IMG/VR virus record: IMGVR_UViG_3300027896_000967
Span: 1 to 10,258 of that record
DNA: 10,258 bases
Reading direction: 5' to 3' (one strand)
In this document: positions 1 through 10,258 of the stretch, in pieces
Position numbering within the stretch: position 1 is the first letter of the stretch
Layout: each line of letters starts with the position of its first letter
Translations under genes and position numbers: made by a program
The notes under the pieces: generated by a model
What the model was told of the DNA's origin: nothing
What the model saw: only the letters and a program-made list of their open reading frames with translations
The model's database searches: none

Positions 1-288
1 TTAAATCGCTTTCCTATATTTTTGACATTTAAGATTATCGCATAAAAATCCATCAGGTTCTCCATATTCTTTAGAATCAATCCAAAAAGGAGATAATGTT
101 TCATTGCATACTTTGCAAAAATGAGAAACCAATTTTTCAGGACTAAATTTTTCAAAATTTATTATGCAATCTGGATATATTTCATAGGGAGAAATTACAT
201 TACATTTTACAGGTAAATTATAAATTGGACACCAAATTTCTCGATATTTTATTTTAGGAAAATTTATCTGTCTTTCAATCATTGCCAT
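1..288 (-). CDS. Cys-rich putative zinc-finger protein (95 aa; may start at the second Met, 282)
   Basis: CKVC...CDNLKC pair plus WCP...KC...DC cysteines; upstream TATA-like elements; same orientation as polB. Confidence 0.65.
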   Translation of the reverse strand: MAMIERQINFPKIKYREIWCPIYNLPVKCNVISPYEIYPDCIINFEKFSPEKLVSHFCKVCNETLSPFWIDSKEYGEPDGFLCDNLKCQKYRKAI

Positions 289-309
289 CTTATGACCGAT
301 CCTAAGACC

Positions 310-342
310 ATATATACGAGTGCATACTTAAAGGTATTTAAA
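310..342 (-). promoter_or_regulatory. Archaeal-type promoter for the Zn-finger gene
   Basis: TTTAAATA (342-335) or CTTTAAGT (333-326) followed by GTATATAT, an architecture shared with the promoter at 5014-5043. Which box is used is ambiguous. Confidence 0.5.
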
Positions 343-351
343 TATGACTAT

Positions 352-2163
352 TTATATAAATTCATTTAAAATAAAAGGCTTTGAATGATTGTCAATGACG
401 ATTCCCTTATCATATTCTCTAGATAGATTTTTCGTTACATATTCTACTCTAACCGTTCCATCTTGAATACCTTTTGAATATCGTGATTTTTTAGTTAAAA
501 ATTGGTTTTGAATGTATTTACCTTCAGACAATTTGATTGCATCTTTTTTAATTCCTTTAATTTTAATTTCATCATTAAAAACATAATCTTTATTTCCATT
601 ACATTTTAAAGTGCCACAATCTACTAGTTTTAATGATCCTAATACTTTTTCATCTACTTTTCCGAATTTAAGTAAATTATCATATCCAATTTGATTTACG
701 AAAATTGAATCGGTATCACAATAATAGAAATTTCCATCTCCTGCAATCATCATAAATTCCCATAATAATCTTCTAGCATAAGATGTAACTGCACTAGAAA
801 TTATTGGTATCGAATCTTTAGAATAATCACCATCAATTTTTTCTGATATGTAAAGATCGTTTCCTATCCGTGTTTTTTCGTCTATTTTGAATGTTCCTAT
901 ATCGGACATTATTTTGAACCATAATTCTTTAACTTTTTCATCAGTTATCATCTTAGTTTCTGTAGATTTCCGTTGGGCAAATTTACCATATAAACTATTT
1001 AATATTTTCTTAGCCATATATTGTATGCTTTTATTTGCAGAATTTTGTTTAATATTATAAAAGAAATCTACGAAACTTTCAAAAATCTTTTCTTGTTTAT
1101 ATGCAACTAGACGATTTACTTTAACAATTTCTCCGATTTCAGGATGATTCAAAATATATTCTATTTCTGGGGAAGTTATTATCTGTTTGAATTTACCTAT
1201 TGGAAAAAGTAATTTATCTCGTTTAGTTGCAATAAAAGGTTTCTTGAGATTTAAGTTACAATCGGCTAAAAGAAATAAATCTTTTGAAATGGATTCTTTA
1301 AGATCATCTATTGAGCAATTAATTATAGGAGTATTTGATAATGGAATTGTAGGATACTTAAATGATTTCATAACAAATGGATACATAGAATTAACATCTA
1401 AATTATATATATTATCAGCTTTTTCAAATATAAAAGTTTCATTTCTGCCTCCACGGTAACTAGCTTTTTCCATATCTAATATTTCTTGATATGTATGGAT
1501 TAAAAGATTCGTATGCAAAAATCTATGACGAAATGCCGTCATAGATTGACCGGCTAAAGTTTTCTTAAAACATCCTAAGTCATTTTCTTTAAGAAATTGA
1601 ATATAATATTTCATAACAGTAGCTAAAACTTGAGTATCACGAATATTATAAGGTATTAATTCTTGATCGGTTGATGTCCTAAAATCTGGAGAATCCATTT
1701 TACTAATTCCAAATGTTTTACCCAATTCTTTAAGAGAATCACTAAAGAAATTTGTGGATGAAATAAAAGATATATTTCCAGCTTCACGAATAAAAACTGG
1801 AGAAATAACATCCATATCTAAAACTAAATGTCGTGAAGATAAATATGAATCTAATTTTAATATAGCATAATCATAAGCCATATTATGAGCAATGACATAC
1901 AATTTTTTCTTAGGATATTCGATGGCAAAACGATCCAATAAATTCCAAAAATCATTAACTGTCTTAAGCGAATATCCAGTTTCCGTCCAACTTTCAATAT
2001 AAGTATTTGTCTTGAATAAATGTATTGCATAACCTAATCTAAAAGTTTGTTCCTCATATTTAGTAGATTTTTTAATAAATGCTTCGGTATCTACGATAAG
2101 TAAATTGGATGGTGATTCCGTGCTTTCATTATGCTTAAGATAATGATTGAATCTATTGCTCAT
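352..2163 (-). CDS. polB: Protein-primed family B DNA polymerase (pPolB), 603 aa
   Basis: ExoI IVDTE, ExoII HNMAYD, ExoIII YNIRD, SYRGGRNE (YxGG), motif A DVNSMYP, motif B KKILNSLYGKFAQ, TSYAR (Tx2AR), motif C YCDTDS, KDY and KIKGI. Insertions between motifs A and B and after motif B sit at the TPR1/TPR2 positions typical of phi29-like polymerases. Confidence 0.97.
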   Translation of the reverse strand: MSNRFNHYLKHNESTESPSNLLIVDTEAFIKKSTKYEEQTFRLGYAIHLFKTNTYIESWTETGYSLKTVNDFWNLLDRFAIEYPKKKLYVIAHNMAYDYAILKLDSYLSSRHLVLDMDVISPVFIREAGNISFISSTNFFSDSLKELGKTFGISKMDSPDFRTSTDQELIPYNIRDTQVLATVMKYYIQFLKENDLGCFKKTLAGQSMTAFRHRFLHTNLLIHTYQEILDMEKASYRGGRNETFIFEKADNIYNLDVNSMYPFVMKSFKYPTIPLSNTPIINCSIDDLKESISKDLFLLADCNLNLKKPFIATKRDKLLFPIGKFKQIITSPEIEYILNHPEIGEIVKVNRLVAYKQEKIFESFVDFFYNIKQNSANKSIQYMAKKILNSLYGKFAQRKSTETKMITDEKVKELWFKIMSDIGTFKIDEKTRIGNDLYISEKIDGDYSKDSIPIISSAVTSYARRLLWEFMMIAGDGNFYYCDTDSIFVNQIGYDNLLKFGKVDEKVLGSLKLVDCGTLKCNGNKDYVFNDEIKIKGIKKDAIKLSEGKYIQNQFLTKKSRYSKGIQDGTVRVEYVTKNLSREYDKGIVIDNHSKPFILNEFI

Positions 2164-2641
2164 ATTTTTGTCCTATATAAGTTTTGATTACTGATCCATC
2201 TATCGCATTGTAAATTCGCAATATCTTCAACTTAATTGGCGATCCACCTTTTGCGTATTCATCTCTAGTACGGTTGAATAAATACTTTTTATTCGTTTCA
2301 TTCATTTCAAATAATTCCTCTGATGTCATTGAGAATCGTCTAAACTCATTTCCATATTTTGATTGCATTAAATAAATATATTTATTCGGTCTTACTCCGG
2401 TTCGTTTAAAATCAGATTTAGTCGCCTTAGTTACAGTAGTTTTTTTCTTATATTCTTTTGGAAAACTTACTTTCAAAACAACATAGTCTTTAACAGCTTC
2501 GGTGTCCTTCTGACTATGCCATTTTCTAGTAGTTATCCAATGTCCAGATTCATCTCTAGCGACAGAATGTAGCCCATTTTTCCATTTTTCTCGCTTTATT
2601 CGAATCGTGGGTGGCGTGGCTAGAGTTGAGGATTTCGCCAA
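2153..2641 (-). CDS. Basic protein, candidate terminal protein for pPolB priming (162 aa, TTG start uncertain)
   Basis: Lys/Arg-rich, many Ser/Thr/Tyr, directly upstream of polB and overlapping its start by 11 nt. The function is inferred from position only. Confidence 0.6.
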   Translation of the reverse strand: MAKSSTLATPPTIRIKREKWKNGLHSVARDESGHWITTRKWHSQKDTEAVKDYVVLKVSFPKEYKKKTTVTKATKSDFKRTGVRPNKYIYLMQSKYGNEFRRFSMTSEELFEMNETNKKYLFNRTRDEYAKGGSPIKLKILRIYNAIDGSVIKTYIGQKYEQ

Positions 2642-2677
2642 CTGATGACCAGAGAGGTAGATAGGTCGGTAGTTACA

Positions 2678-2710
2678 TATAGCTATTGAATATCACGATA
2701 TATATTAAAG
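2678..2710 (-). promoter_or_regulatory. TATA promoter for the terminal protein candidate-polB unit
   Basis: CTTTAATA(TATAT) at 2710-2703 in the gap after the ATPase stop; predicted TSS about 2680. Confidence 0.5.
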
Positions 2711-2720
2711 TGTTAATATA

Positions 2721-3488
2721 TTAATCAGACAATTTTGCTCGTCTGGTTTCGATGGCATCAAAAATAGTATCTGCATATCGTTTAGGGAGATCGTTTCTCA
2801 AACAATAATCTCTAACAACACTTTTCTTTATTTTTTCTATACCATATTGTTTTATAAGTTTATCACAATGAACATCAATATCTTTAATAATATTAGTCAT
2901 ATCATCAGTAATGTTCATTATTAAAGATTTGTCAATAGGATCAATTAATTCTAAAGTATTATACATTTGAAAATACTTTATCGCTTTACTAATAGACAAA
3001 AAATATCTCTTAGGTTTGTATCTACCCTGTCTAGTTATTTTTTGTTCAGAATATAAAAATCCTAAAATATTATCAGTTTTATTCGGATCGATATTAGGAT
3101 TCTTAAGTATTTTAATACATTTAGTTATAAAATTAATCATTTGTCTATATCTTAAATCAAAAGTAGATTCAAGTTGATAAGTTATTATAAAATCCATACC
3201 TCTTTTTCCAGATTGAAAAAGAATGTATGACATATATTTATTAATATCTTTTCCGCTTGAACGAGATTCTATCCAGGCATAAATTTCATCTATTAAAATT
3301 AAACACGGTTCATTAATCTCGAAAAGCATTTCAGGTTTTAAAGCCACATAATTCTTAAAAAATCGTGTATTTAATTGAAAATTGGAGAAAATTCTCCTAT
3401 TCGGATATTTTCTAGCATATTTAAATGCTTGAATAACTGTTCGTAATGTTTTACCTGATCGAACATCACCTTCAAAAGCATATAACAT
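2721..3488 (-). CDS. Zot/pI-like (FtsK-HerA superfamily) morphogenesis/packaging ATPase, 255 aa
   Basis: N-terminal Walker A GDVRSGKT, IFSNF strand, Walker B LILIDEI, QSGKRGMDFIITYQ (strand-4 Gln) and DLRYR. SD AAGTGA 5 nt before ATG. Confidence 0.9.
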   Translation of the reverse strand: MLYAFEGDVRSGKTLRTVIQAFKYARKYPNRRIFSNFQLNTRFFKNYVALKPEMLFEINEPCLILIDEIYAWIESRSSGKDINKYMSYILFQSGKRGMDFIITYQLESTFDLRYRQMINFITKCIKILKNPNIDPNKTDNILGFLYSEQKITRQGRYKPKRYFLSISKAIKYFQMYNTLELIDPIDKSLIMNITDDMTNIIKDIDVHCDKLIKQYGIEKIKKSVVRDYCLRNDLPKRYADTIFDAIETRRAKLSD

Positions 3489-3493
3489 TTATT

Positions 3494-3694
3494 TCACTTA
3501 TATTCCATAATTTCTATTTCCATTTTATGTGTAGAATCTATCCACGGTTTAGCAATAGAAACTATACACGATTCGCAAACATACATCGTATTTTTCTTTC
3601 CAAAATGAAATCCTATTATTCCCAATTTGAAAGGAAAATAAAGTCTTTTAACTTTATATTTAGCTGATCCCATTCCACACCATTTACATTCCAT
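3494..3694 (-). CDS. Small C4 zinc-finger protein (66 aa)
   Basis: CKWC...CESC; GGTGA SD; TAATG stop/start overlap with the upstream gene. Confidence 0.8.
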   Translation of the reverse strand: MECKWCGMGSAKYKVKRLYFPFKLGIIGFHFGKKNTMYVCESCIVSIAKPWIDSTHKMEIEIMEYK

Positions 3695-4092
3695 TAAGTT
3701 TCACCAGTTTGTGGAGGAGACATTAATTTTTCTGATAATCTCCTCTCTTCTTTTATTGTTTCTGTCAATGCTTGAATTATCTCTTTAGATCGTTGTCTTT
3801 TATAACTCACCATATTTTTCCTAAAATTTTCTACGAAATCAACTAATGTTTTTTCACAGTCAGTAGCTTTTTCATCTCCACACCATTTAGCGAGAGTTTC
3901 TAATCTAGTTAAATTCAATGGATTATCTATTTCAGTATGAGCAAAAACATTTTCAGGAGTTAGCATAGCATTTAATATTTGCATCGTGGATTGTTCTTGA
4001 ATCGGAGTAAAATCTCCTTCATTAAAATCCATTTCAGAATCGTCAATATGTTCTGGTGGGGATTTTCTTTTGCTCAACTTTTTATTAACCAT
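3694..4092 (-). CDS. Hypothetical soluble helical protein (132 aa; probable start ATG 4092 rather than GTG 4101)
   Basis: The GTG at 4101 is part of the SD AAGTGA, which lies 5 nt before ATG 4092. The gene is coupled to both neighbours. Confidence 0.8.
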   Translation of the reverse strand: MVNKKLSKRKSPPEHIDDSEMDFNEGDFTPIQEQSTMQILNAMLTPENVFAHTEIDNPLNLTRLETLAKWCGDEKATDCEKTLVDFVENFRKNMVSYKRQRSKEIIQALTETIKEERRLSEKLMSPPQTGET

Positions 4093-4097
4093 TATAA

Positions 4098-4517
4098 TCA
4101 CTTAAAAGGTAAAAAATTTCCTAAAATATATCCAAATGGTAATGCAGTTAAAATTCCTATTATTATATAAAAAACCATTTGTTTAAATTCTGCATTTTTT
4201 AATCCTGAAACCAAATCTTTTACAATGTGCTGATTCATTATTTGATCCCATAGTTTAGGAGAGAATTGTTTTTTAGTATGGTCAAAATCAATTTGACCTT
4301 CCTGTAAATCTACAAAATAATGAAACTTATTTCTTGAACGGTATGCAGGTTTAGTAGAATCAAATTTCATTCTATTATTTTTCGGCCCAACTAATGAAAC
4401 ATTTACTGGAATTTTTTTAACTTTAGTTTGAGTTAAAATTCCTCCTTTCATTTTAACATAATGTAAAACATTTTTATCCTTTCTTGAAAATAATCTATCT
4501 AAAAATTCGGATTCCAT
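4098..4517 (-). CDS. Basic protein with C-terminal transmembrane anchor (139 aa)
   Basis: C-terminal MVFYIIIGILTALPFGYILG; SD GAAGTGA 4 nt before ATG; lies in the ATPase operon. Confidence 0.82.
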   Translation of the reverse strand: MESEFLDRLFSRKDKNVLHYVKMKGGILTQTKVKKIPVNVSLVGPKNNRMKFDSTKPAYRSRNKFHYFVDLQEGQIDFDHTKKQFSPKLWDQIMNQHIVKDLVSGLKNAEFKQMVFYIIIGILTALPFGYILGNFLPFK

Positions 4518-4521
4518 TAAA

Positions 4522-4683
4522 TCACTTCTTTAAACTCTTATCAATACATCTACGAATAACTTTGTGTAATGGTTCCTCTTCAATCTTTTTTAGTTTCTTA
4601 AGATCATCTCTTAAGACAACTGGAACACGGATAGTAGTCATTTTTATTTCTGGTTCATATTCAATTACTAAATTTTGTTCCAT
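4522..4683 (-). CDS. Ribbon-helix-helix (CopG-like) DNA-binding protein, 53 aa (not in ORF track)
   Basis: Manual translation MEQNLVIEYEPEIKMTTIRVPVVLRDDLKKLKKIEEEPLHKVIRRCIDKSLKK. TTIRV strand followed by two amphipathic helices (LRDDLKKLK; LHKVIRRCI); SD AGGAAAGTGA. Confidence 0.85.
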   Translation of the reverse strand: MEQNLVIEYEPEIKMTTIRVPVVLRDDLKKLKKIEEEPLHKVIRRCIDKSLKK

Positions 4684-4774
4684 TGTTCACTTTCCTAATC
4701 AAAAATAAAACAAAAATTGAATTTATTAACCAACCTAATGCAAAAAATAAAATTGCTATTAACCATTCTGGCAT
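4661..4774 (-). CDS. Single-pass membrane microprotein, 37 aa (not in ORF track)
   Basis: Manual translation MPEWLIAILFFALGWLINSIFVLFLIRKVNNGTKFSN. TAATG overlap with the upstream stop, GGAG upstream, fills the apparent gap exactly. Confidence 0.75.
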   Translation of the reverse strand: MPEWLIAILFFALGWLINSIFVLFLIRKVNNGTKFSN

Positions 4775-5013
4775 TATAATTTCTCCATCTTTATTTCCAG
4801 ATTACCTGGCATAACTTTATTCCATGCTCTTACCAATAAATCAGCTTGAGCAAAAGAAAATGGTTCAACACATACAATATATTTATCGGAACCTCTTATT
4901 AATTCGTTGGAAATTATTATTCTTTTAGGCATCTTTTTTCTAAGTCCAAATGCAAATTTTGATGAATATTTAAAATCGAAACCTGATACGCTTATTTTGT
5001 AATTTTCGATCAT
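4774..5013 (-). CDS. Hypothetical protein (79 aa), probably the leaderless first gene of the operon
   Basis: ATG 5013 lies 22 nt downstream of TATA CTTATATA; no SD. Confidence 0.72.
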   Translation of the reverse strand: MIENYKISVSGFDFKYSSKFAFGLRKKMPKRIIISNELIRGSDKYIVCVEPFSFAQADLLVRAWNKVMPGNLEIKMEKL

Positions 5014-5050
5014 CAAGTATATATACGCATACTAGTATATAAGCCTTACG
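5014..5050 (-). promoter_or_regulatory. Archaeal promoter of the small-gene/ATPase operon
   Basis: CTTATATA at 5043-5036 with purine-rich GTAAGG upstream; overlapped by palindrome ATACTAGTAT (5029-5038). Confidence 0.65.
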
Positions 5051-5063
5051 CACTTGCATATAT

Positions 5064-5105
5064 AAAAAAGAAAAATGTTTTATTGCTAATAAATAGCAAT
5101 AAAAC
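5064..5105 (-). terminator. Hairpin plus U-tract terminator after the MCP gene
   Basis: Perfect 12-bp stem GTTTTATTGCTA (5077-5088)/TAGCAATAAAAC (5094-5105) with a 5-nt loop, 5 nt after the MCP stop, followed on the minus strand by TTTTTCTTTTTT. Confidence 0.8.
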
Positions 5106-5110
5106 CTGAA

Positions 5111-5335
5111 TCATTCTGCATTAGAACGCCGCATAAATACCAGAATGATCGTGATAACTGCGAGAACAGGAAGCAATATTGCAACCATTATTCTAACGGA
5201 GTTATCAACATTTGGCATCTTAGCGGCGGTTGTGCTGTTTGCGAGTAGATTCAACGCTACTGGCAACATAATCGCACTAACAAAAAGTGCAATCGCAATT
5301 CCAACAACTTTTTCCATTAGCTCTATCGTATTCAC
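5111..5335 (-). CDS. Major capsid protein of spindle-shaped virus type (His1 gp21 / fusellovirus VP1-like); exact start uncertain
   Basis: Two hydrophobic helices (VVGIAIALFVSAIMLPVAL; IMVAILLPVLAVITIILVF) joined by a polar loop with an N-S-T sequon, and a basic tail RRS. The G..LPV..NxT..PxV..LxP pattern matches mature SSV1 VP1 as I recall it. Dedicated promoter, strong SD GGGGGTGA and terminator. Confidence 0.85.
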   Translation of the reverse strand: MNTIELMEKVVGIAIALFVSAIMLPVALNLLANSTTAAKMPNVDNSVRIMVAILLPVLAVITIILVFMRRSNAE

Positions 5336-5348
5336 CCCCTTTTGGAGT

Positions 5349-5393
5349 TATGATCCAGTATCGCTATCTAATTATATAAACTTGTTTTATATA
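5349..5393 (-). promoter_or_regulatory. Consensus BRE-TATA promoter of the MCP gene
   Basis: Minus strand AAAACAAG-TTTATATA (TATA 5380-5373). Predicted TSS about 5349, giving a short leader that contains the SD. Confidence 0.7.
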
Positions 5394-5435
5394 TTAATAA
5401 CTATTTTCATATACATTAATATACGGATGTATATA

Positions 5436-5475
5436 GGAAGGTTCTTTATATCAATACGAATATATAGATATTGGA
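5436..5475 (+). promoter_or_regulatory. Promoter of the plus-strand structural operon
   Basis: CTTTATAT at 5444-5451 followed 8 nt later by ATATATAG; alternative TTTATATA at 5386-5393. Confidence 0.5.
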
Positions 5476-5486
5476 TAACGATCAAT

Positions 5487-8186
5487 TTGATTCGTAAAAT
5501 ATTTTCTATAAGCATTATAATTATTTTTATCTTTTCCTCATTAGTAAGTTTAACATCTAATGATAAAGAAAAATCTTCAATTATTAACGAAAAAAATATC
5601 TCTAAAATAATGGATTTAACCTATCCTAATAATGATAAATCCGTATTATGGATGAGGCATAATGGATCGGATGCAGGATTTCCATATAGAGGGGCAAATG
5701 TTCCTGCATCATTAGGAATGAATTTTTTCGGAACCAATATACTTCAAGTTGGATGGGATTTTAATTTAACCGAATTAGAAACTACTACTTTAATTCCACC
5801 TGATGCACAACTTTACATACAAATTTCTTATTTATTCGCAAATATTAATTATGTTACAGCAGTAGCTAATCTGGCTTTAACGGATCATAGAATAATAGGT
5901 TGTTGGATAGATGATTTTCCTGTCGGCCAGGTAGCCGCTTGGGAGATAGCCGATATATATTCGGCGGTACATTCTAAAGATAATGTTGGATATTCGCACA
6001 CTTTAAAATTAGCTATCGTAATATATCAATATAATTATTTTATACAATCTCCCGTTCCGTGGACAGATTACATAAATTATTTTGATATAATACAATTTTG
6101 GTTTTATCCACGATCATATCCACTTCTATATTCTGAATTTTATGGATATTATGACGATTTTCAATTAATGAGAGCCTCAATACCAGGTAAAGAATATTGG
6201 ATAGGTATATATCTTCACTACTATAATGTTGGAGAATATCCATATACATTTACAAATGACCAAATGAATATAGCGTTGAAACTACTTAGAGGTGGATCAA
6301 TTTCAAAAATAACAATATTAGAAAATTTCTGGATTCAATGGAACATTCCAACCGCACAGATTATTAAAAAATACTTAGATGAATATAATTATAATTATGT
6401 TACAAAAATGTATAGTGAAACTAACATACAATCTTTTATAAATGGAAATAATGGAACATTAACAACCACATTGATTAATAATGTAAGTAAGATAATTCCA
6501 TTCAGCGATGGAGTTTATAATTTTACCGGATATAATGTTACATTTTATTCTAAAAGATTACAGGATTTATGGGTATTTGGTTATGGAACAATAGTTATAA
6601 ATGATCGTCTTACTCTTGTAGATATGAGAACCGGAGAATATGATTTCGGTATTCAAGACGACTATTATTTTTGTTATAAATATCATTTAGAGGAAGGAAA
6701 AACATACAAATTAGTAAATATCATACATTCGGTTTATTATATTTACGGAACGGTTGATCTAACTGATACAGGATTTAGTAATGGGGAACATACTATAAAT
6801 GGTATGCACTTTATGTATAATACATCTACCCATATAATGAAAATTTTTCCTGGTATTTATATTATATCAGGAAAAATTTACATAAATGCTACTGTTGATA
6901 TGTTGTTTTCCGAATTTATTTTCACGGTTGATAATTATATTGACCACACATATCTACATACAAAACCTGCTTATGGATTCATATTTGAGAGTAATAATAT
7001 CAATCTCAGATTTTATATGCAAAATTGTATCGTTTCTGGTCAATCTAAAACATATCCTTATTTATTTTATAGGTATAGAGAATCGTGGAACGGGAAATTT
7101 AATGGAACCGGAGATTTTCCTTATGAACAATGGGTATTCATTGAAAATTCAATAATTGCTGGATACTGGGATAATTATAAACCATCCGGAATACTTTATT
7201 TTGAAAATACTACTTTTTATGGTGTTCAACCTAGCGGTACGAATGTTCATTCTGGATTATGGATAGAATCTCCAAGCAATTATATTGGTATGTTAGAAAT
7301 GTATAATGTAACGGTATGGAATTACGAAATACCTGGAGTATGTGGAGTTTTCATAATGCCAGCGGGATTATGGAATGACAAGCCTCTTTTTGTAATGACG
7401 GGTATGACATTGATCGAATTTAAAGGCCATTTAACTCCAACCGATGTTGTTTTTTATGGCCTAGGTGGTGTCTTAGGTTTCTTTTCACATCACATTAAAG
7501 TTTTAAATGCTACAGGATATTATGTTTCACAAAACAAATTTTTAGTAAGCAATTTAACTATAGTCGGTGGAAATTGGGGACTATGGACAGATACAACTTA
7601 TTCTTTATCTGGAACAAAAATAGATAATCTTACCTGTATTGGAGAGGATTTGCAAACTACACAATATTTTAATGGAACATATATTCCTTATGGAAATCAT
7701 ATCTTTATAACATTTAGATTAGATGGAACACAAACAATTATTTTCGTAGCAAAAATGAAAACATTGATCGCTAGTTGGAGTATTTATGCTCCATATTATG
7801 TAAGACAATATTTTGAAGTGCAATTTAAAGGAATTTCAAATGGAATATATGCGCTAACAATAGACGGGGTGATATACTATAATAGTGTTGAAAAAAATAC
7901 GCTTACAATACTTTATGTAGGATCGTGGTCGCCAACTAGAAATAATTTCACTTTACAATTTTACGGTACTACTAGCTCATCTCAAACCGGAATATCTAAT
8001 TTAATTTGGCTAATTATAATGTTTTCTCCCGCTATGTTATTAACCCAGGCAATACCAAAAATAGGATTCATATTCGGAATTTCAATAATGATATTAATAA
8101 TAGGAATATCCGATCTAACATTCTTTCCATATATGTTTGTAAGTTTTTTCGTAATAGCAGTTTTAACATATAAGGAGTTGGGATAA
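5487..8186 (+). CDS. Large membrane-anchored virion glycoprotein / adhesin (fusellovirus VP4-like architecture), about 899 aa
   Basis: Signal-peptide-like (M)IRKIFSISIIIIFIFSSLVSL from TTG 5487 (ATG 5427 is an alternative). At least 15 N-x-S/T sequons, beta-helix-like repeats (NCIVSG, NSIIAG, NTTFYG, NVTVWN, NLTIVG, NLTCIG) and three C-terminal hydrophobic segments. Confidence 0.8.
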   Translation: MIRKIFSISIIIIFIFSSLVSLTSNDKEKSSIINEKNISKIMDLTYPNNDKSVLWMRHNGSDAGFPYRGANVPASLGMNFFGTNILQVGWDFNLTELETTTLIPPDAQLYIQISYLFANINYVTAVANLALTDHRIIGCWIDDFPVGQVAAWEIADIYSAVHSKDNVGYSHTLKLAIVIYQYNYFIQSPVPWTDYINYFDIIQFWFYPRSYPLLYSEFYGYYDDFQLMRASIPGKEYWIGIYLHYYNVGEYPYTFTNDQMNIALKLLRGGSISKITILENFWIQWNIPTAQIIKKYLDEYNYNYVTKMYSETNIQSFINGNNGTLTTTLINNVSKIIPFSDGVYNFTGYNVTFYSKRLQDLWVFGYGTIVINDRLTLVDMRTGEYDFGIQDDYYFCYKYHLEEGKTYKLVNIIHSVYYIYGTVDLTDTGFSNGEHTINGMHFMYNTSTHIMKIFPGIYIISGKIYINATVDMLFSEFIFTVDNYIDHTYLHTKPAYGFIFESNNINLRFYMQNCIVSGQSKTYPYLFYRYRESWNGKFNGTGDFPYEQWVFIENSIIAGYWDNYKPSGILYFENTTFYGVQPSGTNVHSGLWIESPSNYIGMLEMYNVTVWNYEIPGVCGVFIMPAGLWNDKPLFVMTGMTLIEFKGHLTPTDVVFYGLGGVLGFFSHHIKVLNATGYYVSQNKFLVSNLTIVGGNWGLWTDTTYSLSGTKIDNLTCIGEDLQTTQYFNGTYIPYGNHIFITFRLDGTQTIIFVAKMKTLIASWSIYAPYYVRQYFEVQFKGISNGIYALTIDGVIYYNSVEKNTLTILYVGSWSPTRNNFTLQFYGTTSSSQTGISNLIWLIIMFSPAMLLTQAIPKIGFIFGISIMILIIGISDLTFFPYMFVSFFVIAVLTYKELG

Positions 8187-8194
8187 TCGCAGTA

Positions 8195-8413
8195 ATGGAT
8201 TATATAGTTATTATAGGAGCAATAATAGCTTTCAGCTCTTTTTGTTCAATAACTAGAAAAGGTTTTTCAACGAATGTTTTTATGGCATCATTTGCAATAT
8301 CCATTATGATATTGATATGGAAAAATATGTTGCCAGTATTTTCAGTAATATTTGTAATAATCATAACAATAGGATTGTTATTCTCAGCAAAAAAAGGTGA
8401 AGATATTGAATAA
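8195..8413 (+). CDS. Small 3-TM membrane protein (72 aa)
   Basis: Almost wholly hydrophobic with a charged tail; directly follows the adhesin and resembles its C-terminal anchor. Confidence 0.8.
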   Translation: MDYIVIIGAIIAFSSFCSITRKGFSTNVFMASFAISIMILIWKNMLPVFSVIFVIIITIGLLFSAKKGEDIE

Positions 8414-8870
8414 AATGTTGGTATTCCCAATAGCAATTATGTTTCTAATGACAATGTTTATTTTCTTAGAAACTTCTATTCAACCTTCCTCCGAATCTGG
8501 AGATTATTCTAGCCCAGGAAAATTATATGTTAATGGTTCTGATGCAAAAAATGGATCGTATAATAATCCTCAAGCAACATCTAAAACACTTAATATTTGG
8601 AGTATTAATGGAGTTTTAATAATTTTAGGAATAGCATTAGCGGCGGGTATGGTTGCAGGAATAACAGTTTTAGGATCGGGAGTTTCCGGGTTCGCAGAAT
8701 CATTAATATTTAGTAGTATTTTATATCTAGGATTGTGGGGATGTTTGACAATAATATCATCCTCATTTTTCTTTAATAATGGCCCATTAGTTATGATTAT
8801 ATGGGTAGGTTTAACAATGTTGTATGTTGTTGGATTCGCAACTCAAATAAATTCGTCAGAGGGTACTTAA
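8406..8870 (+). CDS. Multi-pass membrane glycoprotein (154 aa; probable start TTG 8406), putative tail/virion component
   Basis: SD GGTGA 5 nt before TTG. N-terminal TM, polar loop with two NGS sequons, then three Gly-rich TM segments. Confidence 0.8.
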   Translation: MNKMLVFPIAIMFLMTMFIFLETSIQPSSESGDYSSPGKLYVNGSDAKNGSYNNPQATSKTLNIWSINGVLIILGIALAAGMVAGITVLGSGVSGFAESLIFSSILYLGLWGCLTIISSSFFFNNGPLVMIIWVGLTMLYVVGFATQINSSEGT

Positions 8871-9107
8871 GTGATAACCGATTCATTGTTAATTTATTTT
8901 CTAGGACAGATCGTATTGCTAATAATTAATATTATTGCATATACGAAAATACCATATATTTCTATAATAGGAATAATGGGAGATTTAGCATTAGCGGCGG
9001 ATACAATCATAGCATTTGGAAATTACTATCTTATTGCAGTAATTCTAATACTTACAAATACAATAATTCCATTTTTATCAATAGCTAAAGCAGTAAGAGG
9101 TAGGTAA
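8871..9107 (+). CDS. Small multi-TM membrane protein (78 aa)
   Basis: GTG abutting the upstream stop, SD GAGGGT, hydrophobic throughout with basic tail KAVRGR. Confidence 0.8.
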   Translation: MITDSLLIYFLGQIVLLIINIIAYTKIPYISIIGIMGDLALAADTIIAFGNYYLIAVILILTNTIIPFLSIAKAVRGR

Positions 9108-9310
9108 TGACATTTGAAGATCAAATGTTCACAATATTAATGTTTGGAGGAACATATTTTTTTGTAACTACATTTCTATCAACTATGAAAGATGAATATA
9201 AACATTATAAAATATGGTCTAATGAACATCCAAATTTTATAATAAAGGAATTGAACAAACAAAAAATTGAACGGATGAAATTATATGAGCATTTTCAAAA
9301 ATCTAGTTGA
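9107..9310 (+). CDS. Hypothetical protein with N-terminal hydrophobic segment (67 aa)
   Basis: TAATG overlap, SD GAGGT, segment MFTILMFGGTYFFVTTFL. Confidence 0.72.
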   Translation: MTFEDQMFTILMFGGTYFFVTTFLSTMKDEYKHYKIWSNEHPNFIIKELNKQKIERMKLYEHFQKSS

Positions 9311-9455
9311 ATCAGTTAATAATTGGATCGACAATTATAAAATGATAAGAGATAATAAAACTGATTTACTAATGAAAAAATTAGGTTATCCAGATTACAG
9401 AAAACATATTTTAGAGGAGGAATTTAAACGATTACAATTAAAATCACAAAAATAA
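9285..9455 (+). CDS. Hypothetical basic helical protein, 56 aa (not in ORF track)
   Basis: Manual translation MSIFKNLVESVNNWIDNYKMIRDNKTDLLMKKLGYPDYRKHILEEEFKRLQLKSQK. GGATGA upstream; overlaps both neighbours and fills the gap. Confidence 0.7.
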   Translation: MSIFKNLVESVNNWIDNYKMIRDNKTDLLMKKLGYPDYRKHILEEEFKRLQLKSQK

Positions 9456-10258
9456 TTTCGTTTTCATTAGTAGCTTTTTTTCTTATTACTACATTTTCTG
9501 GAATCATCAAACCAGTTTCCGCAACACCACCAACAATAACTGCTTATAAAATAAGTCCGACTAATGCTTTATCTGGAACAGAAATTTTGTGTTGGCTTAC
9601 TTATACCGATGCAGACAACGATCCTCCAAATTATGTTAGATGTGAACGGTCTACAACACCAGGAACATCGGGATTACAACCGCCAGTAAATAATATGATT
9701 GCTAACGATAGTGGAGATGTAACTTATACCGATGGAAAACAATATTATTTCAATTGGTTTTATTTTCCATTTGTAGGAACCGGATTCATATTATTTATGG
9801 TTCAATCTGGAGCTGATGCTCAAGTAACTAAATTTGTTGTTTGTTTTCAACAAGTAGAAATAATATTATCTCATTTAGGAGTTACTCCTGCGAATAATAA
9901 TGCAGGAAATCATACATTTTTTGCTAATTATACTGATACATTTAATAACCCTCCGAATTATTTATATGTATATATAAATGGAATATCTTATTCAATGAGC
10001 AAGAATAATTCTAGCGATACTCATTTCGTAATCGGAGTAGACTATTTTTACACTTCATATCTTTTAGAAGGTAATAATACATTTGCATTTAAAGCTCAAA
10101 TGTATTATACAGTTGTGGGAAATCCAATATATTCTGGAACATTCTGGATCAAAATTCATAATGATACCGCAAATAATAATGTATTTCTAGTTTTAATTGT
10201 CGCTTCTTTACTTAGTATATTTATTATACTAATAGTTGCGACACGAAAAAAGGAGTAG
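9428..10258 (+). CDS. Type I membrane glycoprotein with two tandem Ig-like repeats; probable non-canonical start (ACG 9428 or ATT 9431)
   Basis: The frame is open from 9428, after TAA 9425-9427, and encodes the signal peptide TITIKITKIISFSLVAFFLITTFSGIIKPVSA. SD GAGGAGG at 9414-9420; repeats TYTDADNDPPNYV / NYTDTFNNPPNYL; C-terminal TM followed by RKKE. Confidence 0.8.
   Translation, partial: TITIKITKIISFSLVAFFLITTFSGIIKPVSATPPTITAYKISPTNALSGTEILCWLTYTDADNDPPNYVRCERSTTPGTSGLQPPVNNMIANDSGDVTYTDGKQYYFNWFYFPFVGTGFILFMVQSGADAQVTKFVVCFQQVEIILSHLGVTPANNNAGNHTFFANYTDTFNNPPNYLYVYINGISYSMSKNNSSDTHFVIGVDYFYTSYLLEGNNTFAFKAQMYYTVVGNPIYSGTFWIKIHNDTANNNVFLVLIVASLLSIFIILIVATRKKE

What the first reader, a model, noticed from the sequence alone, without database searches (positions are those of the whole stretch)
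1..10258. Probable undescribed spindle-shaped archaeal virus combining protein-primed replication with a Zot/pI-like ATPase, possibly infecting Asgard archaea
Seen: intact pPolB, two-helix MCP, P-loop ATPase, adhesin plus small TM proteins, archaeal TATA/SD signals and low GC. Known: pPolB together with a spindle MCP occurs in His1 (Halspiviridae), Thaspiviridae and Asgard-linked spindle viruses, and wyrdviruses were described with pI-like ATPases. Inferred: a linear dsDNA genome with terminal proteins and non-lytic membrane egress. The basic, AT-rich proteome argues against a haloarchaeal host. The terminal Ig-like repeats resemble surface-protein repeats I associate with Lokiarchaeia and other anaerobic sediment archaea. 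I cannot confirm novelty without a search.
Basis: partly seen in the sequence, partly recalled or inferred. Interest (0 to 1): 0.85.

Follow-up and report, generated by a model that had tools for sequence, protein, structure and literature searches.

The report
Wyrdvirus-like spindle virus of archaea
The window is most of the roughly 13-kb genome of an uncultured archaeal virus from an already described group, the spindle-shaped wyrdviruses of Asgard archaea, so it is a new relative and not a new kind of virus.

Summary
[quoted passage not shown] The window is an IMG/VR entry cut at gene boundaries out of a 12.9-13.0 kb contig that was assembled twice.

The claimed new combination of polymerase, spindle capsid and pI-like ATPase is not new. 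It is the published gene set of the polymerase-encoding wyrdviruses (Medvedeva et al.). The window shares seven genes with WyrdV2, six with WyrdV1 and five with Muninn virus. Its polymerase falls in a well-supported clade whose sister branch holds WyrdV2. It differs from them in sequence (19-37% identity) and in having the virion-building genes split into two divergent arms.

No terminal inverted repeats were recovered for this contig, but four relatives have them.

An Asgard host is plausible but unproven. MAG labels are useless here. However, the last gene carries two copies of a repeat domain that recurs in giant cellular proteins, and every strong named hit is an Asgard archaeon. Verdict: a new member of a known kind, of moderate interest.

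The parts
1..288 (-). 95-aa Cys-rich (CxxC-type) small protein with no family hit. It is the first gene of the small-gene arm, which continues beyond the window.
   Evidence: Found only in this virus. The flank beyond position 1 holds a SAM methyltransferase and zinc-ribbon proteins.
352..2163 (-). [quoted passage not shown]
   Evidence: PF03175 E 1.7e-33; phrog_1907 2e-48. Exo and polymerase motifs are invariant. 30% identity to the WyrdV2 polymerase, E 9e-75. Tree placement.
2153..2641 (-). 162-aa very basic protein (pI 10) that overlaps the polymerase start. Candidate terminal protein; this is inference from position only.
   Evidence: Conserved only in the closer relatives, always directly upstream of pPolB. 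No family hit.
2721..3488 (-). Zot/pI-type P-loop morphogenesis ATPase, 255 aa, with no membrane segment.
   Evidence: Pfam Zot 21.1 bits against 20.3; phrog_197. Walker A and B motifs present. PDB 2r2a E 6e-6. AF2 model pLDDT 80.5. BFVD top hits include Inoviridae Zot-annotated proteins. WyrdV1 'AAA+ ATPase' 4e-22, Muninn 2e-24, WyrdV2 6e-28.
3494..3694 (-). 66-aa zinc-ribbon-like protein.
   Evidence: Two CxxC pairs in the translation. Weak Zn_ribbon_15 hit. Present in some relatives.
3694..4101 (-). 135-aa conserved protein of the wyrdvirus morphogenetic block.
   Evidence: Matches WyrdV1 9629-9970 (2e-7), Muninn 8724-9047 (2e-9) and WyrdV2 (2e-7). Core gene.
4098..4517 (-). 139-aa conserved protein with a C-terminal membrane anchor. 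It is the counterpart of the WyrdV1 gene annotated 'conserved fusellovirus protein B277'.
   Evidence: 2.6e-5 to WyrdV1, 6e-8 to Muninn. Membrane segment at 113-137. Core gene.
4522..4683 (-). 53-aa basic conserved small protein, possibly a DNA-binding regulator (inference).
   Evidence: Conserved across the clade. No family hit.
4774..5016 (-). 80-aa protein of unknown function, specific to this virus.
5078..5104 (-). 11-bp hairpin followed by a T-run on the minus strand, directly after the MCP stop. Likely a transcription terminator.
   Evidence: Read from the sequence.
5111..5335 (-). His1-like major capsid protein, 74 aa, two hydrophobic helices.
   Evidence: Missed by the public gene calls.
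5336..5426 (.). AT-rich divergent intergenic region with TATA-like boxes for the MCP arm and the adhesin arm.
   Evidence: Consistent with archaeal promoters, not proof.
5427..8186 (+). Adhesin-like large virion protein, 919 aa. It has an N-terminal anchor or signal, a glycoside-hydrolase-like (beta/alpha)8 domain, a beta-rich middle and C-terminal membrane helices.
   Evidence: Position next to the MCP as in wyrdviruses. Conserved but fast-evolving in relatives. No detectable sequence similarity to the WyrdV1 adhesin. AF2 pLDDT 62. Foldseek matches GH30, GH27, GH51 and GH18 barrels. Membrane segments.
8195..8413 (+). 72-aa three-helix membrane protein, the first gene after the adhesin.
   Evidence: Weak match to the first gene after the adhesin in WyrdV1 and WyrdV2 (3e-3 each)..
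8397..8870 (+). 157-aa multi-pass membrane protein; core gene.
   Evidence: WyrdV1 1e-5, Muninn 8e-6, LCBv1 4e-3; WyrdV2 1.6e-6..
8871..9107 (+). 78-aa three-helix membrane protein.
   Evidence: Conserved in the window's clade..
9107..9455 (+). Two small soluble ORFs of 67 and 56 aa, specific to this virus.
9455..10258 (+). Surface protein with a signal-peptide-like N-terminus, two copies of a roughly 95-aa repeat domain and a C-terminal anchor. The domain is shared with giant Asgard cell-surface proteins.
   Evidence: Relatives carry 700-1250-aa versions.

Best explanation
The window is about 80% of the near-complete, roughly 13-kb linear dsDNA genome of an uncultured archaeal virus. It belongs to the wyrdvirus/Muninn assemblage of spindle-shaped viruses.

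**Shown here**
- It encodes the group's five-gene core: a His1-like MCP, a pI/Zot-type ATPase without a membrane anchor, and three conserved block proteins of 135, 139 and 157 aa.
- It also has an adhesin-like protein and a polymerase that groups with that of WyrdV2.

**Inferred mechanism**
- The polymerase copies the linear genome from terminal inverted repeats. It primes on a terminal protein, and the basic 162-aa protein just upstream of the polymerase gene is the candidate.
- The two-helix MCP is inserted into the host membrane and assembles into a lemon-shaped shell.
- The adhesin and the small membrane proteins sit at one pole.
- The soluble ATPase, together with the membrane-anchored 139-aa protein, drives assembly and extrusion without lysis, as proposed for wyrdviruses.

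**Host**
- The host is most likely a low-GC Asgard archaeon, about 0.65 on my estimate.
- The only relatives with CRISPR-linked hosts infect Lokiarchaeia and Odinarchaeia.
- The last gene carries a repeat domain typical of giant Asgard surface proteins.
For: **Source**
- The window is an IMG/VR UViG trimmed from a 12.9/13.0-kb contig that was assembled independently twice.
- A 6.5-kb stretch is identical in another metagenome.

**Individual genes**
- pPolB is intact.
- MCP homology: a clade-only HMM hits His1 VP21 at 33 bits and WyrdV1 MCPs at 47 bits; hhalign probability 98.9%.
- ATPase.

**Gene sharing**
- Shared with WyrdV1, Muninn and LCBv1 and with WyrdV2, contig Ga0209633_10003833.
- The core is present in all group members examined.
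- pPolB tree: the window sits in a clade of 37 rows (SH-aLRT 96) that almost all carry the core genes. Its sister branch holds WyrdV2.

**Genome form**
- Terminal inverted repeats occur in relatives: L140 73 nt, L102 76 nt, L013 27 nt, L085 19 nt.
- All polymerase relatives sit on contigs of 18.8 kb or less.
- The flanks hold no cellular genes, integrase or Cas1.

**Host lead**
- The repeat domain of the last ORF recurs up to 35 times in proteins of 2,000-6,800 aa on contigs of up to 184 kb.
- All strong hits that carry an organism name are Asgard: Lokiarchaeia/Lokiarchaeota, Helarchaeota, Hodarchaeota, Sigynarchaeota and Promethearchaeota.
- GC is 0.286, against 0.283 in WyrdV1.
- Published definition of wyrdviruses.
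Against: - No terminal inverted repeat is present in either assembly of this contig. Both ends are probably short by 100-250 nt compared with relatives.
- The terminal protein is assigned by position only.
- The adhesin has no detectable sequence similarity to the WyrdV1 adhesin, and its model is of low confidence.
- The window MCP alone is below the Pfam His1_capsid cut-off (13.5 against 27 bits). Only 3 of 11 clade members reach E <= 0.01.
- By fold alone the ATPase resembles RecA and KaiC as much as 2r2a.
- Gene order differs from published wyrdviruses.
- There is no CRISPR or other direct host link.
- Related contigs are binned into MAGs of many bacterial and archaeal phyla. One core-bearing relative sits in a Thermoplasmatota bin.
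- Relatives range from 26% to 50% GC.
- Weak bacterial homologues of the repeat domain exist.
- No virion has been seen.
Confidence: 0.85

Rival explanations
1. It is the same kind of virus, but the host is a non-Asgard archaeon of anoxic sediments, for example Bathyarchaeia, Thermoplasmatota, a methanogen or a DPANN archaeon. The repeat domain would have reached the virus by horizontal transfer unrelated to its current host.
For: - There is no direct host link.
- Core-bearing relatives are binned in Thermoplasmatota and Paludibacter MAGs.
- Relatives range from 26% to 50% GC.
- His1-like MCP viruses with pPolB are also predicted for methanogens (PMC9796341).
- Weak bacterial homologues of the repeat domain exist.
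Against: - Bins of such small contigs are plainly unreliable. They include Saccharibacteria, Armatimonadota and others.
- The only CRISPR-linked relatives, WyrdV1 and Muninn, infect Asgard archaea.
- All named strong carriers of the repeat domain are Asgard.
- GC matches WyrdV1.
Confidence: 0.3
2. It is a non-viral linear pPolB plasmid or a casposon-like element, not a virus.
For: - pPolB occurs in plasmids and casposons.
- No terminal repeats were recovered.
- Many polymerase relatives in MAGs lack the capsid and ATPase genes.
Against: - The window carries the full spindle-virus structural and morphogenetic gene set.
- No Cas1, integrase or cellular flank is present.
- Contig sizes are capped near 19 kb.
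Confidence: 0.03
3. It is a member of Halspiviridae (His1-like) or Thaspiviridae and not of the wyrdvirus group.
For: It shares the MCP fold family and protein-primed replication with His1.
Against: - Only the MCP is shared with His1 among the profiled families.
- The His1 polymerase is a distant outgroup at 66 bits.
- No His1 or Nitrosopumilus virus record matched the polymerase at E <= 1e-5.
- The basic proteome is unlike that of haloarchaeal viruses.
Confidence: 0.03
4. It has the same gene set, but the virion is not a spindle, for example a pleomorphic vesicle or a short rod.
For: No particle of any wyrdvirus or of Muninn virus has been imaged in the papers read here. Morphology is inferred from MCP homology alone.
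Against: His1-type MCPs are so far known only from spindle-shaped virions (stated).
Confidence: 0.1

Closest known systems
Wyrdviruses WyrdV2/WyrdV3/WyrdV6 (Medvedeva et al., 'Viruses of Asgard archaea'; WyrdV2 = contig Ga0209633_10003833)
   Same: - One His1-like MCP, a large adhesin, a pI-like ATPase without a membrane domain, conserved block proteins, and a pPolB of the same clade.
- Small, low-GC genome: WyrdV2 is 13.75 kb at 24.6% GC.
- Seven genes are shared by BLASTP.
   Different: - Only 19-37% amino-acid identity.
- In WyrdV2 the genes from MCP to ATPase run on one strand. Here the run MCP-139-135-ATPase-162-pPolB reads leftward and the run adhesin-72-157-78 reads rightward.
- The protein upstream of the polymerase and all small genes are unrelated.
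- TIRs are reported for WyrdV2 and 3 but were not recovered here.
- The terminal repeat-domain gene is not detected in WyrdV2.
Lokiarchaeota virus WyrdV1 (MZ666939)
   Same: MCP, ATPase and the block proteins are shared, six genes in all. GC is nearly identical at 28.3%.
   Different: WyrdV1 has two MCP paralogues, no polymerase, and a colinear module. Adhesin similarity is undetectable.
Muninn virus (OM716000; Odinarchaeum yellowstonii; Tamarit et al. 2022)
   Same: - 12.7-kb linear genome with TIRs.
- pPolB, His1-like MCP, and the block proteins corresponding to 135, 139 and 157 aa.
- An ATPase homologue that is not annotated in the record.
   Different: - Thermophilic host.
- The polymerase is of another lineage, on a long separate branch; the paper places it near SEV1.
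- Colinear module.
- 27-36% identity.
His1 virus (Halspiviridae)
   Same: Two-helix MCP family, protein-primed linear genome of similar size (14.5 kb), and an adhesin-type protein.
   Different: - No pI/Zot-type ATPase or block proteins were detected in His1 with the profiles used.
- The polymerase is distant.
- Halophilic host.
pI/Zot morphogenesis ATPases of filamentous phages (Tubulavirales)
   Same: The N-terminal P-loop domain belongs to the same family.
   Different: There is no transmembrane or periplasmic C-terminal part. The virus type and host domain are different.

Membership tests
Wyrdviruses (as defined in bioRxiv 10.1101/2021.07.29.453957) | One or two His1-like major capsid proteins of about 80 aa with two hydrophobic segments | tested here: met
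   BLASTP to both WyrdV1 MCPs at 6e-8 and 2.5e-7. hhalign probability 98.9%. Two hydrophobic segments.
Wyrdviruses (as defined in bioRxiv 10.1101/2021.07.29.453957) | AAA+/P-loop ATPase most similar to pI of filamentous phages and lacking a transmembrane domain | tested here: met
   4e-22 to the WyrdV1 ATPase and 6e-28 to that of WyrdV2. Zot family hits. No membrane segment.
Wyrdviruses (as defined in bioRxiv 10.1101/2021.07.29.453957) | Receptor-binding adhesin in the morphogenetic module | tested here: inconclusive
   A 919-aa protein sits next to the MCP with a similar size and C-terminal helices. BLASTP to the WyrdV1 adhesin is not significant. The glycosidase-like fold comes from a low-confidence model.
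Wyrdviruses (as defined in bioRxiv 10.1101/2021.07.29.453957) | [quoted passage not shown] | tested here: inconclusive
   Four of the five have counterparts: 157, 139 and 135 aa are significant and 72 aa is weak. They are not one block, because they are split over two divergent arms.
Wyrdviruses (as defined in bioRxiv 10.1101/2021.07.29.453957) | In the linear members, a pPolB of the WyrdV2/3/6 type and terminal inverted repeats | tested here: inconclusive
   The polymerase is in the same supported clade as WyrdV2. No TIR is found in this contig. TIRs are present in four relatives.
Wyrdviruses (as defined in bioRxiv 10.1101/2021.07.29.453957) | Asgard (Lokiarchaeia) host shown by CRISPR spacers | not testable with these tools
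   No spacer search is available. Indirect support comes from the repeat domain shared with Asgard giant proteins.
[quoted passage not shown] | Exo I-III and polymerase motifs A, B and C intact; Pfam DNA_pol_B_2 | tested here: met
   Invariant D25/E27, N94/D98, Y172/D176, D256, K385/Y392/G393 and D483/D485.
[quoted passage not shown] | Terminal protein and inverted terminal repeats on a linear genome | tested here: inconclusive
   The 162-aa basic protein upstream of the polymerase is only a positional candidate. No TIR is found here.
Zot/pI ATPase family (PF05707) | N-terminal P-loop NTPase domain scoring above the family cut-off | tested here: met
   21.1 bits against a cut-off of 20.3, which is marginal. 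Reinforced by the profile hit to PDB 2r2a at E 6e-6 and by PHROG 197.
Zot/pI ATPase family (PF05707) | C-terminal transmembrane segment and periplasmic domain, as in phage pI | tested here: not met
   No hydrophobic segment. The C-terminus is a charged helical bundle. The same holds for published wyrdvirus ATPases.
Halspiviridae | Gene content shared with His1 beyond the MCP and the polymerase class | tested here: not met
   Only the MCP profile hits His1. The polymerase is distant.
Casposons / integrated elements | Cas1 integrase, chromosomal flanks | tested here: not met
   No such gene is in the window or in the full contig. Relatives occur only on contigs of 18.8 kb or less.

The most novel reading that the evidence does not exclude
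The window represents a distinct, family-level lineage within a wider order-like assemblage that also holds the wyrdviruses and Muninn virus. The assemblage would be defined by a five-gene core. This lineage has a rearranged, two-armed morphogenetic module. It is numerous in sediment metagenomes yet almost invisible to virus-calling pipelines: 143 ATPase relatives were found in JGI metagenomes but only 8 in IMG/VR. It would also have captured a repeat domain from the giant surface proteins of its Asgard hosts. That domain could serve as a sequence-based host marker and points to surface mimicry or attachment.
Probability: 0.4. Interest if true: 0.55.

Novelty: new member of a known kind. Interest (0 to 1): 0.4.

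Why it matters
Few viruses of Asgard archaea are known. Wyrdviruses were described from a handful of deep-sea contigs.

- This contig and its many relatives show that the same virus design is much more widespread and diverse than those first examples. More than 100 polymerases at 36-79% identity were found, all on contigs of 18.8 kb or less.
- Standard gene calling misses its capsid gene.
- Related contigs contaminate bacterial MAGs.
- The repeat domain shared with giant Asgard surface proteins gives a testable lead to the host and to how the virus meets the cell surface.

It does not change the picture of how such viruses replicate or assemble.

Tried and rejected
- **Close-relative scan of IMG/VR with the polymerase.** It found only the window itself.
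- **Word-indexed protein search with the MCP.** It gave one hit, because the gene is not called in public annotations. tblastn of the MCP against the phage collection gave nothing.
- **Terminal inverted repeats.** I searched the window and both full assemblies and found none.
- **Host from MAG labels.** I rejected this. Polymerase relatives sit in bins of many unrelated phyla.
- **Sample identifiers.** None of them was found in the paper library, so the environment could not be named.
- **Fold search of the ATPase against PDB.** It does not discriminate Zot from RecA or KaiC.
- **Pfam on the adhesins of 12 relatives.** No family was hit.
- **tRNAs.** None.
- **Fylgjaviridae, the cultivated Lokiarchaeum provirus.** I considered and dismissed it. 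It is an integrating 16-kb provirus assigned to a family of its own.
- **Programmed frameshift joining the 56-aa ORF to the last ORF.** I considered it and judged it less likely than a non-canonical start. It was not tested.

Full report
**Source of the window.** An exact 35-mer finds the window as the whole of IMG/VR entry IMGVR_UViG_3300027896_000967. That entry starts and ends exactly on stop codons. The polymerase protein is encoded on two longer assemblies: JGI Ga0209777_10006722 (12,895 bp) and ENA ERZ27247850 k141_161107 (12,969 bp). The two are 99.98% identical.

The window is therefore a gene-boundary trim. About 2.4 kb lie beyond position 1 and 0.2-0.3 kb beyond position 10258. The extra part carries a SAM-dependent methyltransferase and small zinc-ribbon proteins. 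It has no cellular genes, integrase or Cas1. A 6,481-bp contig from another metagenome is 100% identical.

**Check of the observation.** Seventeen genes cover 96% of the window in two divergent arms.

*Leftward arm:*
- MCP, 5111-5335.
- Three small or mid-sized proteins of 80, 53 and 139 aa.
- A 135-aa protein and a 66-aa zinc ribbon.
- The ATPase, 2721-3488.
- A very basic 162-aa protein.
- The polymerase, 352-2163.
- A 95-aa Cys-rich protein.

*Rightward arm:*
- A 919-aa protein, probably starting at 5427. The mechanical 1013-aa ORF runs antisense through the MCP gene.
- Membrane proteins of 72, 157 and 78 aa.
- Two small ORFs.
- A surface protein with two repeats.

The polymerase is PF03175 (E 1.7e-33), and all exonuclease and polymerase motifs are invariant. 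The ATPase has Walker A and B motifs and no membrane segment. It scores just above the Pfam Zot cut-off, hits PHROG 197, and as a profile hits PDB 2r2a, the N-terminal domain of a Neisseria Zot-family protein (E 6e-6). Its model (pLDDT 80.5) matches Zot-annotated inovirus proteins best among viral structures. Against PDB the generic RecA and KaiC fold scores equally well.

The window MCP alone is below the Pfam His1_capsid cut-off. A profile built only from this clade's MCPs hits the WyrdV1, Muninn and His1 capsid proteins and nothing else. Profile-profile comparison gives 98.9% probability. GC is 0.26-0.32 and the proteome is basic.

**What it is.** In the phage and archaeal-virus collection the polymerase is nearest to LCBv1 and Muninn virus from the Odinarchaeum study. 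The ATPase hits only Muninn virus and Lokiarchaeota virus WyrdV1.

ORF-by-ORF BLASTP results:
- WyrdV1: six shared genes, namely MCP, ATPase and the 157-, 139-, 135- and, weakly, 72-aa proteins.
- Muninn virus: five shared genes.
- WyrdV2: seven shared genes, including the polymerase at E 9e-75. A metagenome scan with the ATPase alignment had recovered WyrdV2 itself, contig Ga0209633_10003833.

A presence table shows a five-gene core of MCP, ATPase and the 135-, 139- and 157-aa proteins. It is present in the window's clade, WyrdV1, WyrdV2 and Muninn virus.

In a polymerase tree the window lies in a fully supported group of eight contigs of 13-19 kb. That group sits inside a supported clade (SH-aLRT 96) of 37 rows. 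Almost all of these carry the core genes, and the sister branch contains WyrdV2. This was a quick-search tree with long branches elsewhere.

The paper that defined wyrdviruses lists a His1-like MCP, an adhesin, a five-gene block and a pI-like ATPase lacking a membrane domain. It reports polymerases in WyrdV2, 3, 6 and 7 and terminal repeats in WyrdV2 and 3.

**Differences from the described members.**
- Identities are 19-37%.
- The module is split into two divergent arms instead of one colinear run. All close relatives share this arrangement.
- The adhesin is not detectably similar in sequence to that of WyrdV1.
- The protein upstream of the polymerase is lineage-specific.

**Genome form.** No inverted terminal repeat is present in either assembly. 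The ends align to positions 100-250 nt inside related contigs, so the termini are probably missing. Four relatives do carry terminal inverted repeats of 19-76 nt. Muninn virus shows its published repeat in the same test. All polymerase relatives are on contigs of 18.8 kb or less. A linear, protein-primed genome is thus well-founded inference but is not shown for this contig.

**Adhesin.** The model is weak overall (pLDDT 62). Residues 70-350 form a confident (beta/alpha)8 barrel followed by beta-rich domains and three C-terminal helices. The best structural matches are GH30, GH27, GH51 and GH18 glycosidases. This agrees with the 'carbohydrate-binding adhesin' label of WyrdV1 but remains tentative.

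**Host.** MAG labels are not usable. Polymerase homologues carry Lokiarchaeota and Thorarchaeota labels but also Paludibacter. In species-representative genomes they are scattered over Saccharibacteria, Armatimonadota, Anaerolineales, Archaeoglobales, Thermoplasmatota and others, always on small contigs.

A better lead is the last ORF. With its signal-peptide-like N-terminus it is 267 aa and holds two copies of a roughly 95-aa domain. An exhaustive search found 372 homologues. Most are giant proteins of 1,000-6,800 aa with up to 35 copies of the domain, on contigs of up to 184 kb. One of these contigs carries ThiF, JAB and transporter genes. These proteins are cellular.

Every organism name attached to the strong hits is Asgard: Lokiarchaeia/Lokiarchaeota, Helarchaeota, Hodarchaeota, Sigynarchaeota and Promethearchaeota. 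Only much weaker hits are bacterial. Three lines of evidence therefore make an Asgard host the best guess, at about 0.65:
- The CRISPR-linked hosts of WyrdV1 and Muninn virus.
- The match in GC with WyrdV1.
- The repeat domain shared with Asgard surface proteins.

The 26-50% GC spread among relatives suggests that the wider group infects several lineages.

**Mechanism.**

*Shown:* the gene set and its homologies.

*Inferred from the families involved:*
- Protein-primed replication from terminal repeats by the polymerase. The 162-aa basic protein is the likely primer, because terminal-protein genes commonly precede the polymerase gene in protein-primed viruses (my own knowledge).
- Membrane insertion of the two-helix MCP and assembly of a spindle-shaped shell.
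- The adhesin and small membrane proteins at one pole.
- ATP-driven, non-lytic release by the soluble pI-type ATPase together with membrane-anchored partners, as proposed for wyrdviruses.

A hairpin followed by a T-run directly after the MCP gene fits strong, separately terminated capsid expression.

**Novelty and verdict.** Only nine papers in the library mention wyrdviruses or Muninn virus, and none describes this lineage. IMG/VR holds only eight ATPase relatives against 143 in JGI metagenomes. The contig is a new, divergent member of a known kind. It is probably a new genus or family within the wyrdvirus/Muninn assemblage. It is not a new combination of functions. Interest is moderate.

Noticed in passing
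window 5111-5335 (-) versus 5145-8186 (+): Public gene calls on both source contigs take the 1013-aa ORF and omit the capsid gene on the opposite strand. This is why the MCP has almost no database relatives by protein search. The adhesin probably starts at ATG 5427.
   Followed up: yes
L001 (Muninn virus OM716000), about 8031-8705 (-): The GenBank record has no annotated feature over a clear homologue of the wyrdvirus pI-like ATPase (35% identity to the window's ATPase, E 6e-21). The ORF appears to overlap the 3' end of the polymerase gene.
   Followed up: partly
window 310-328 and 5019-5033: The motif ATATATAC-(0-4 nt)-GCATACT occurs twice, with 0 expected in shuffles. Each copy lies just upstream, on the minus strand, of a leftward gene start (the 95-aa and 80-aa ORFs). 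It may be a shared promoter or operator element.
   Followed up: partly
window 5078-5104: A perfect 11-bp hairpin with a 5-nt loop, followed on the minus strand by a T-rich run, lies immediately downstream of the MCP stop codon. It is a likely terminator.
   Followed up: no
window 9428-9586: The last ORF has a textbook signal-peptide-like N-terminus in frame upstream of its first TTG, but there is no ATG, GTG or TTG there. Possible explanations are an ATT or ATA start, or something less ordinary. The preceding ORF ends on CAA AAA TAA, one frame away.
   Followed up: no
L020-L078 (genome-contig hits): Small pPolB-bearing contigs of 2-18 kb are binned into species-representative MAGs of many bacterial phyla, including Paludibacter, Saccharibacteria, Armatimonadota and Anaerolineales. 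These are probably mis-binned mobile elements or viruses. Two of them (L020, L033) carry the full wyrdvirus core.
   Followed up: partly
L004 11750-12500 and both contig ends: GC rises from about 0.28 to 0.43-0.47 near the small-gene end of the full contig. A run of GAAAC pentamers lies about 100-135 nt from that end. Its meaning is unknown; it may be terminal or origin sequence.
   Followed up: no
L081 (Ga0031655_10006090): A 6,481-bp contig from a different metagenome is 100% identical to the window's virus over its whole length.
   Followed up: partly
L160 (GCA_040960625.1, JBFOMW010000788.1) and proteins P0135-P0332: The roughly 95-aa domain of the last ORF has no Pfam match. It forms arrays of up to 35 copies in Asgard proteins of 2,000-6,800 aa that also carry PKD, LamG, S8 peptidase or HEAT regions. 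It looks like an undescribed, mainly Asgard, surface repeat.
   Followed up: partly
L002 (LCBv1 OM716002) 2252-2689 (-): The window MCP matches both halves of this 145-aa protein. This agrees with the tandem MCP duplication reported by Tamarit et al.
   Followed up: no
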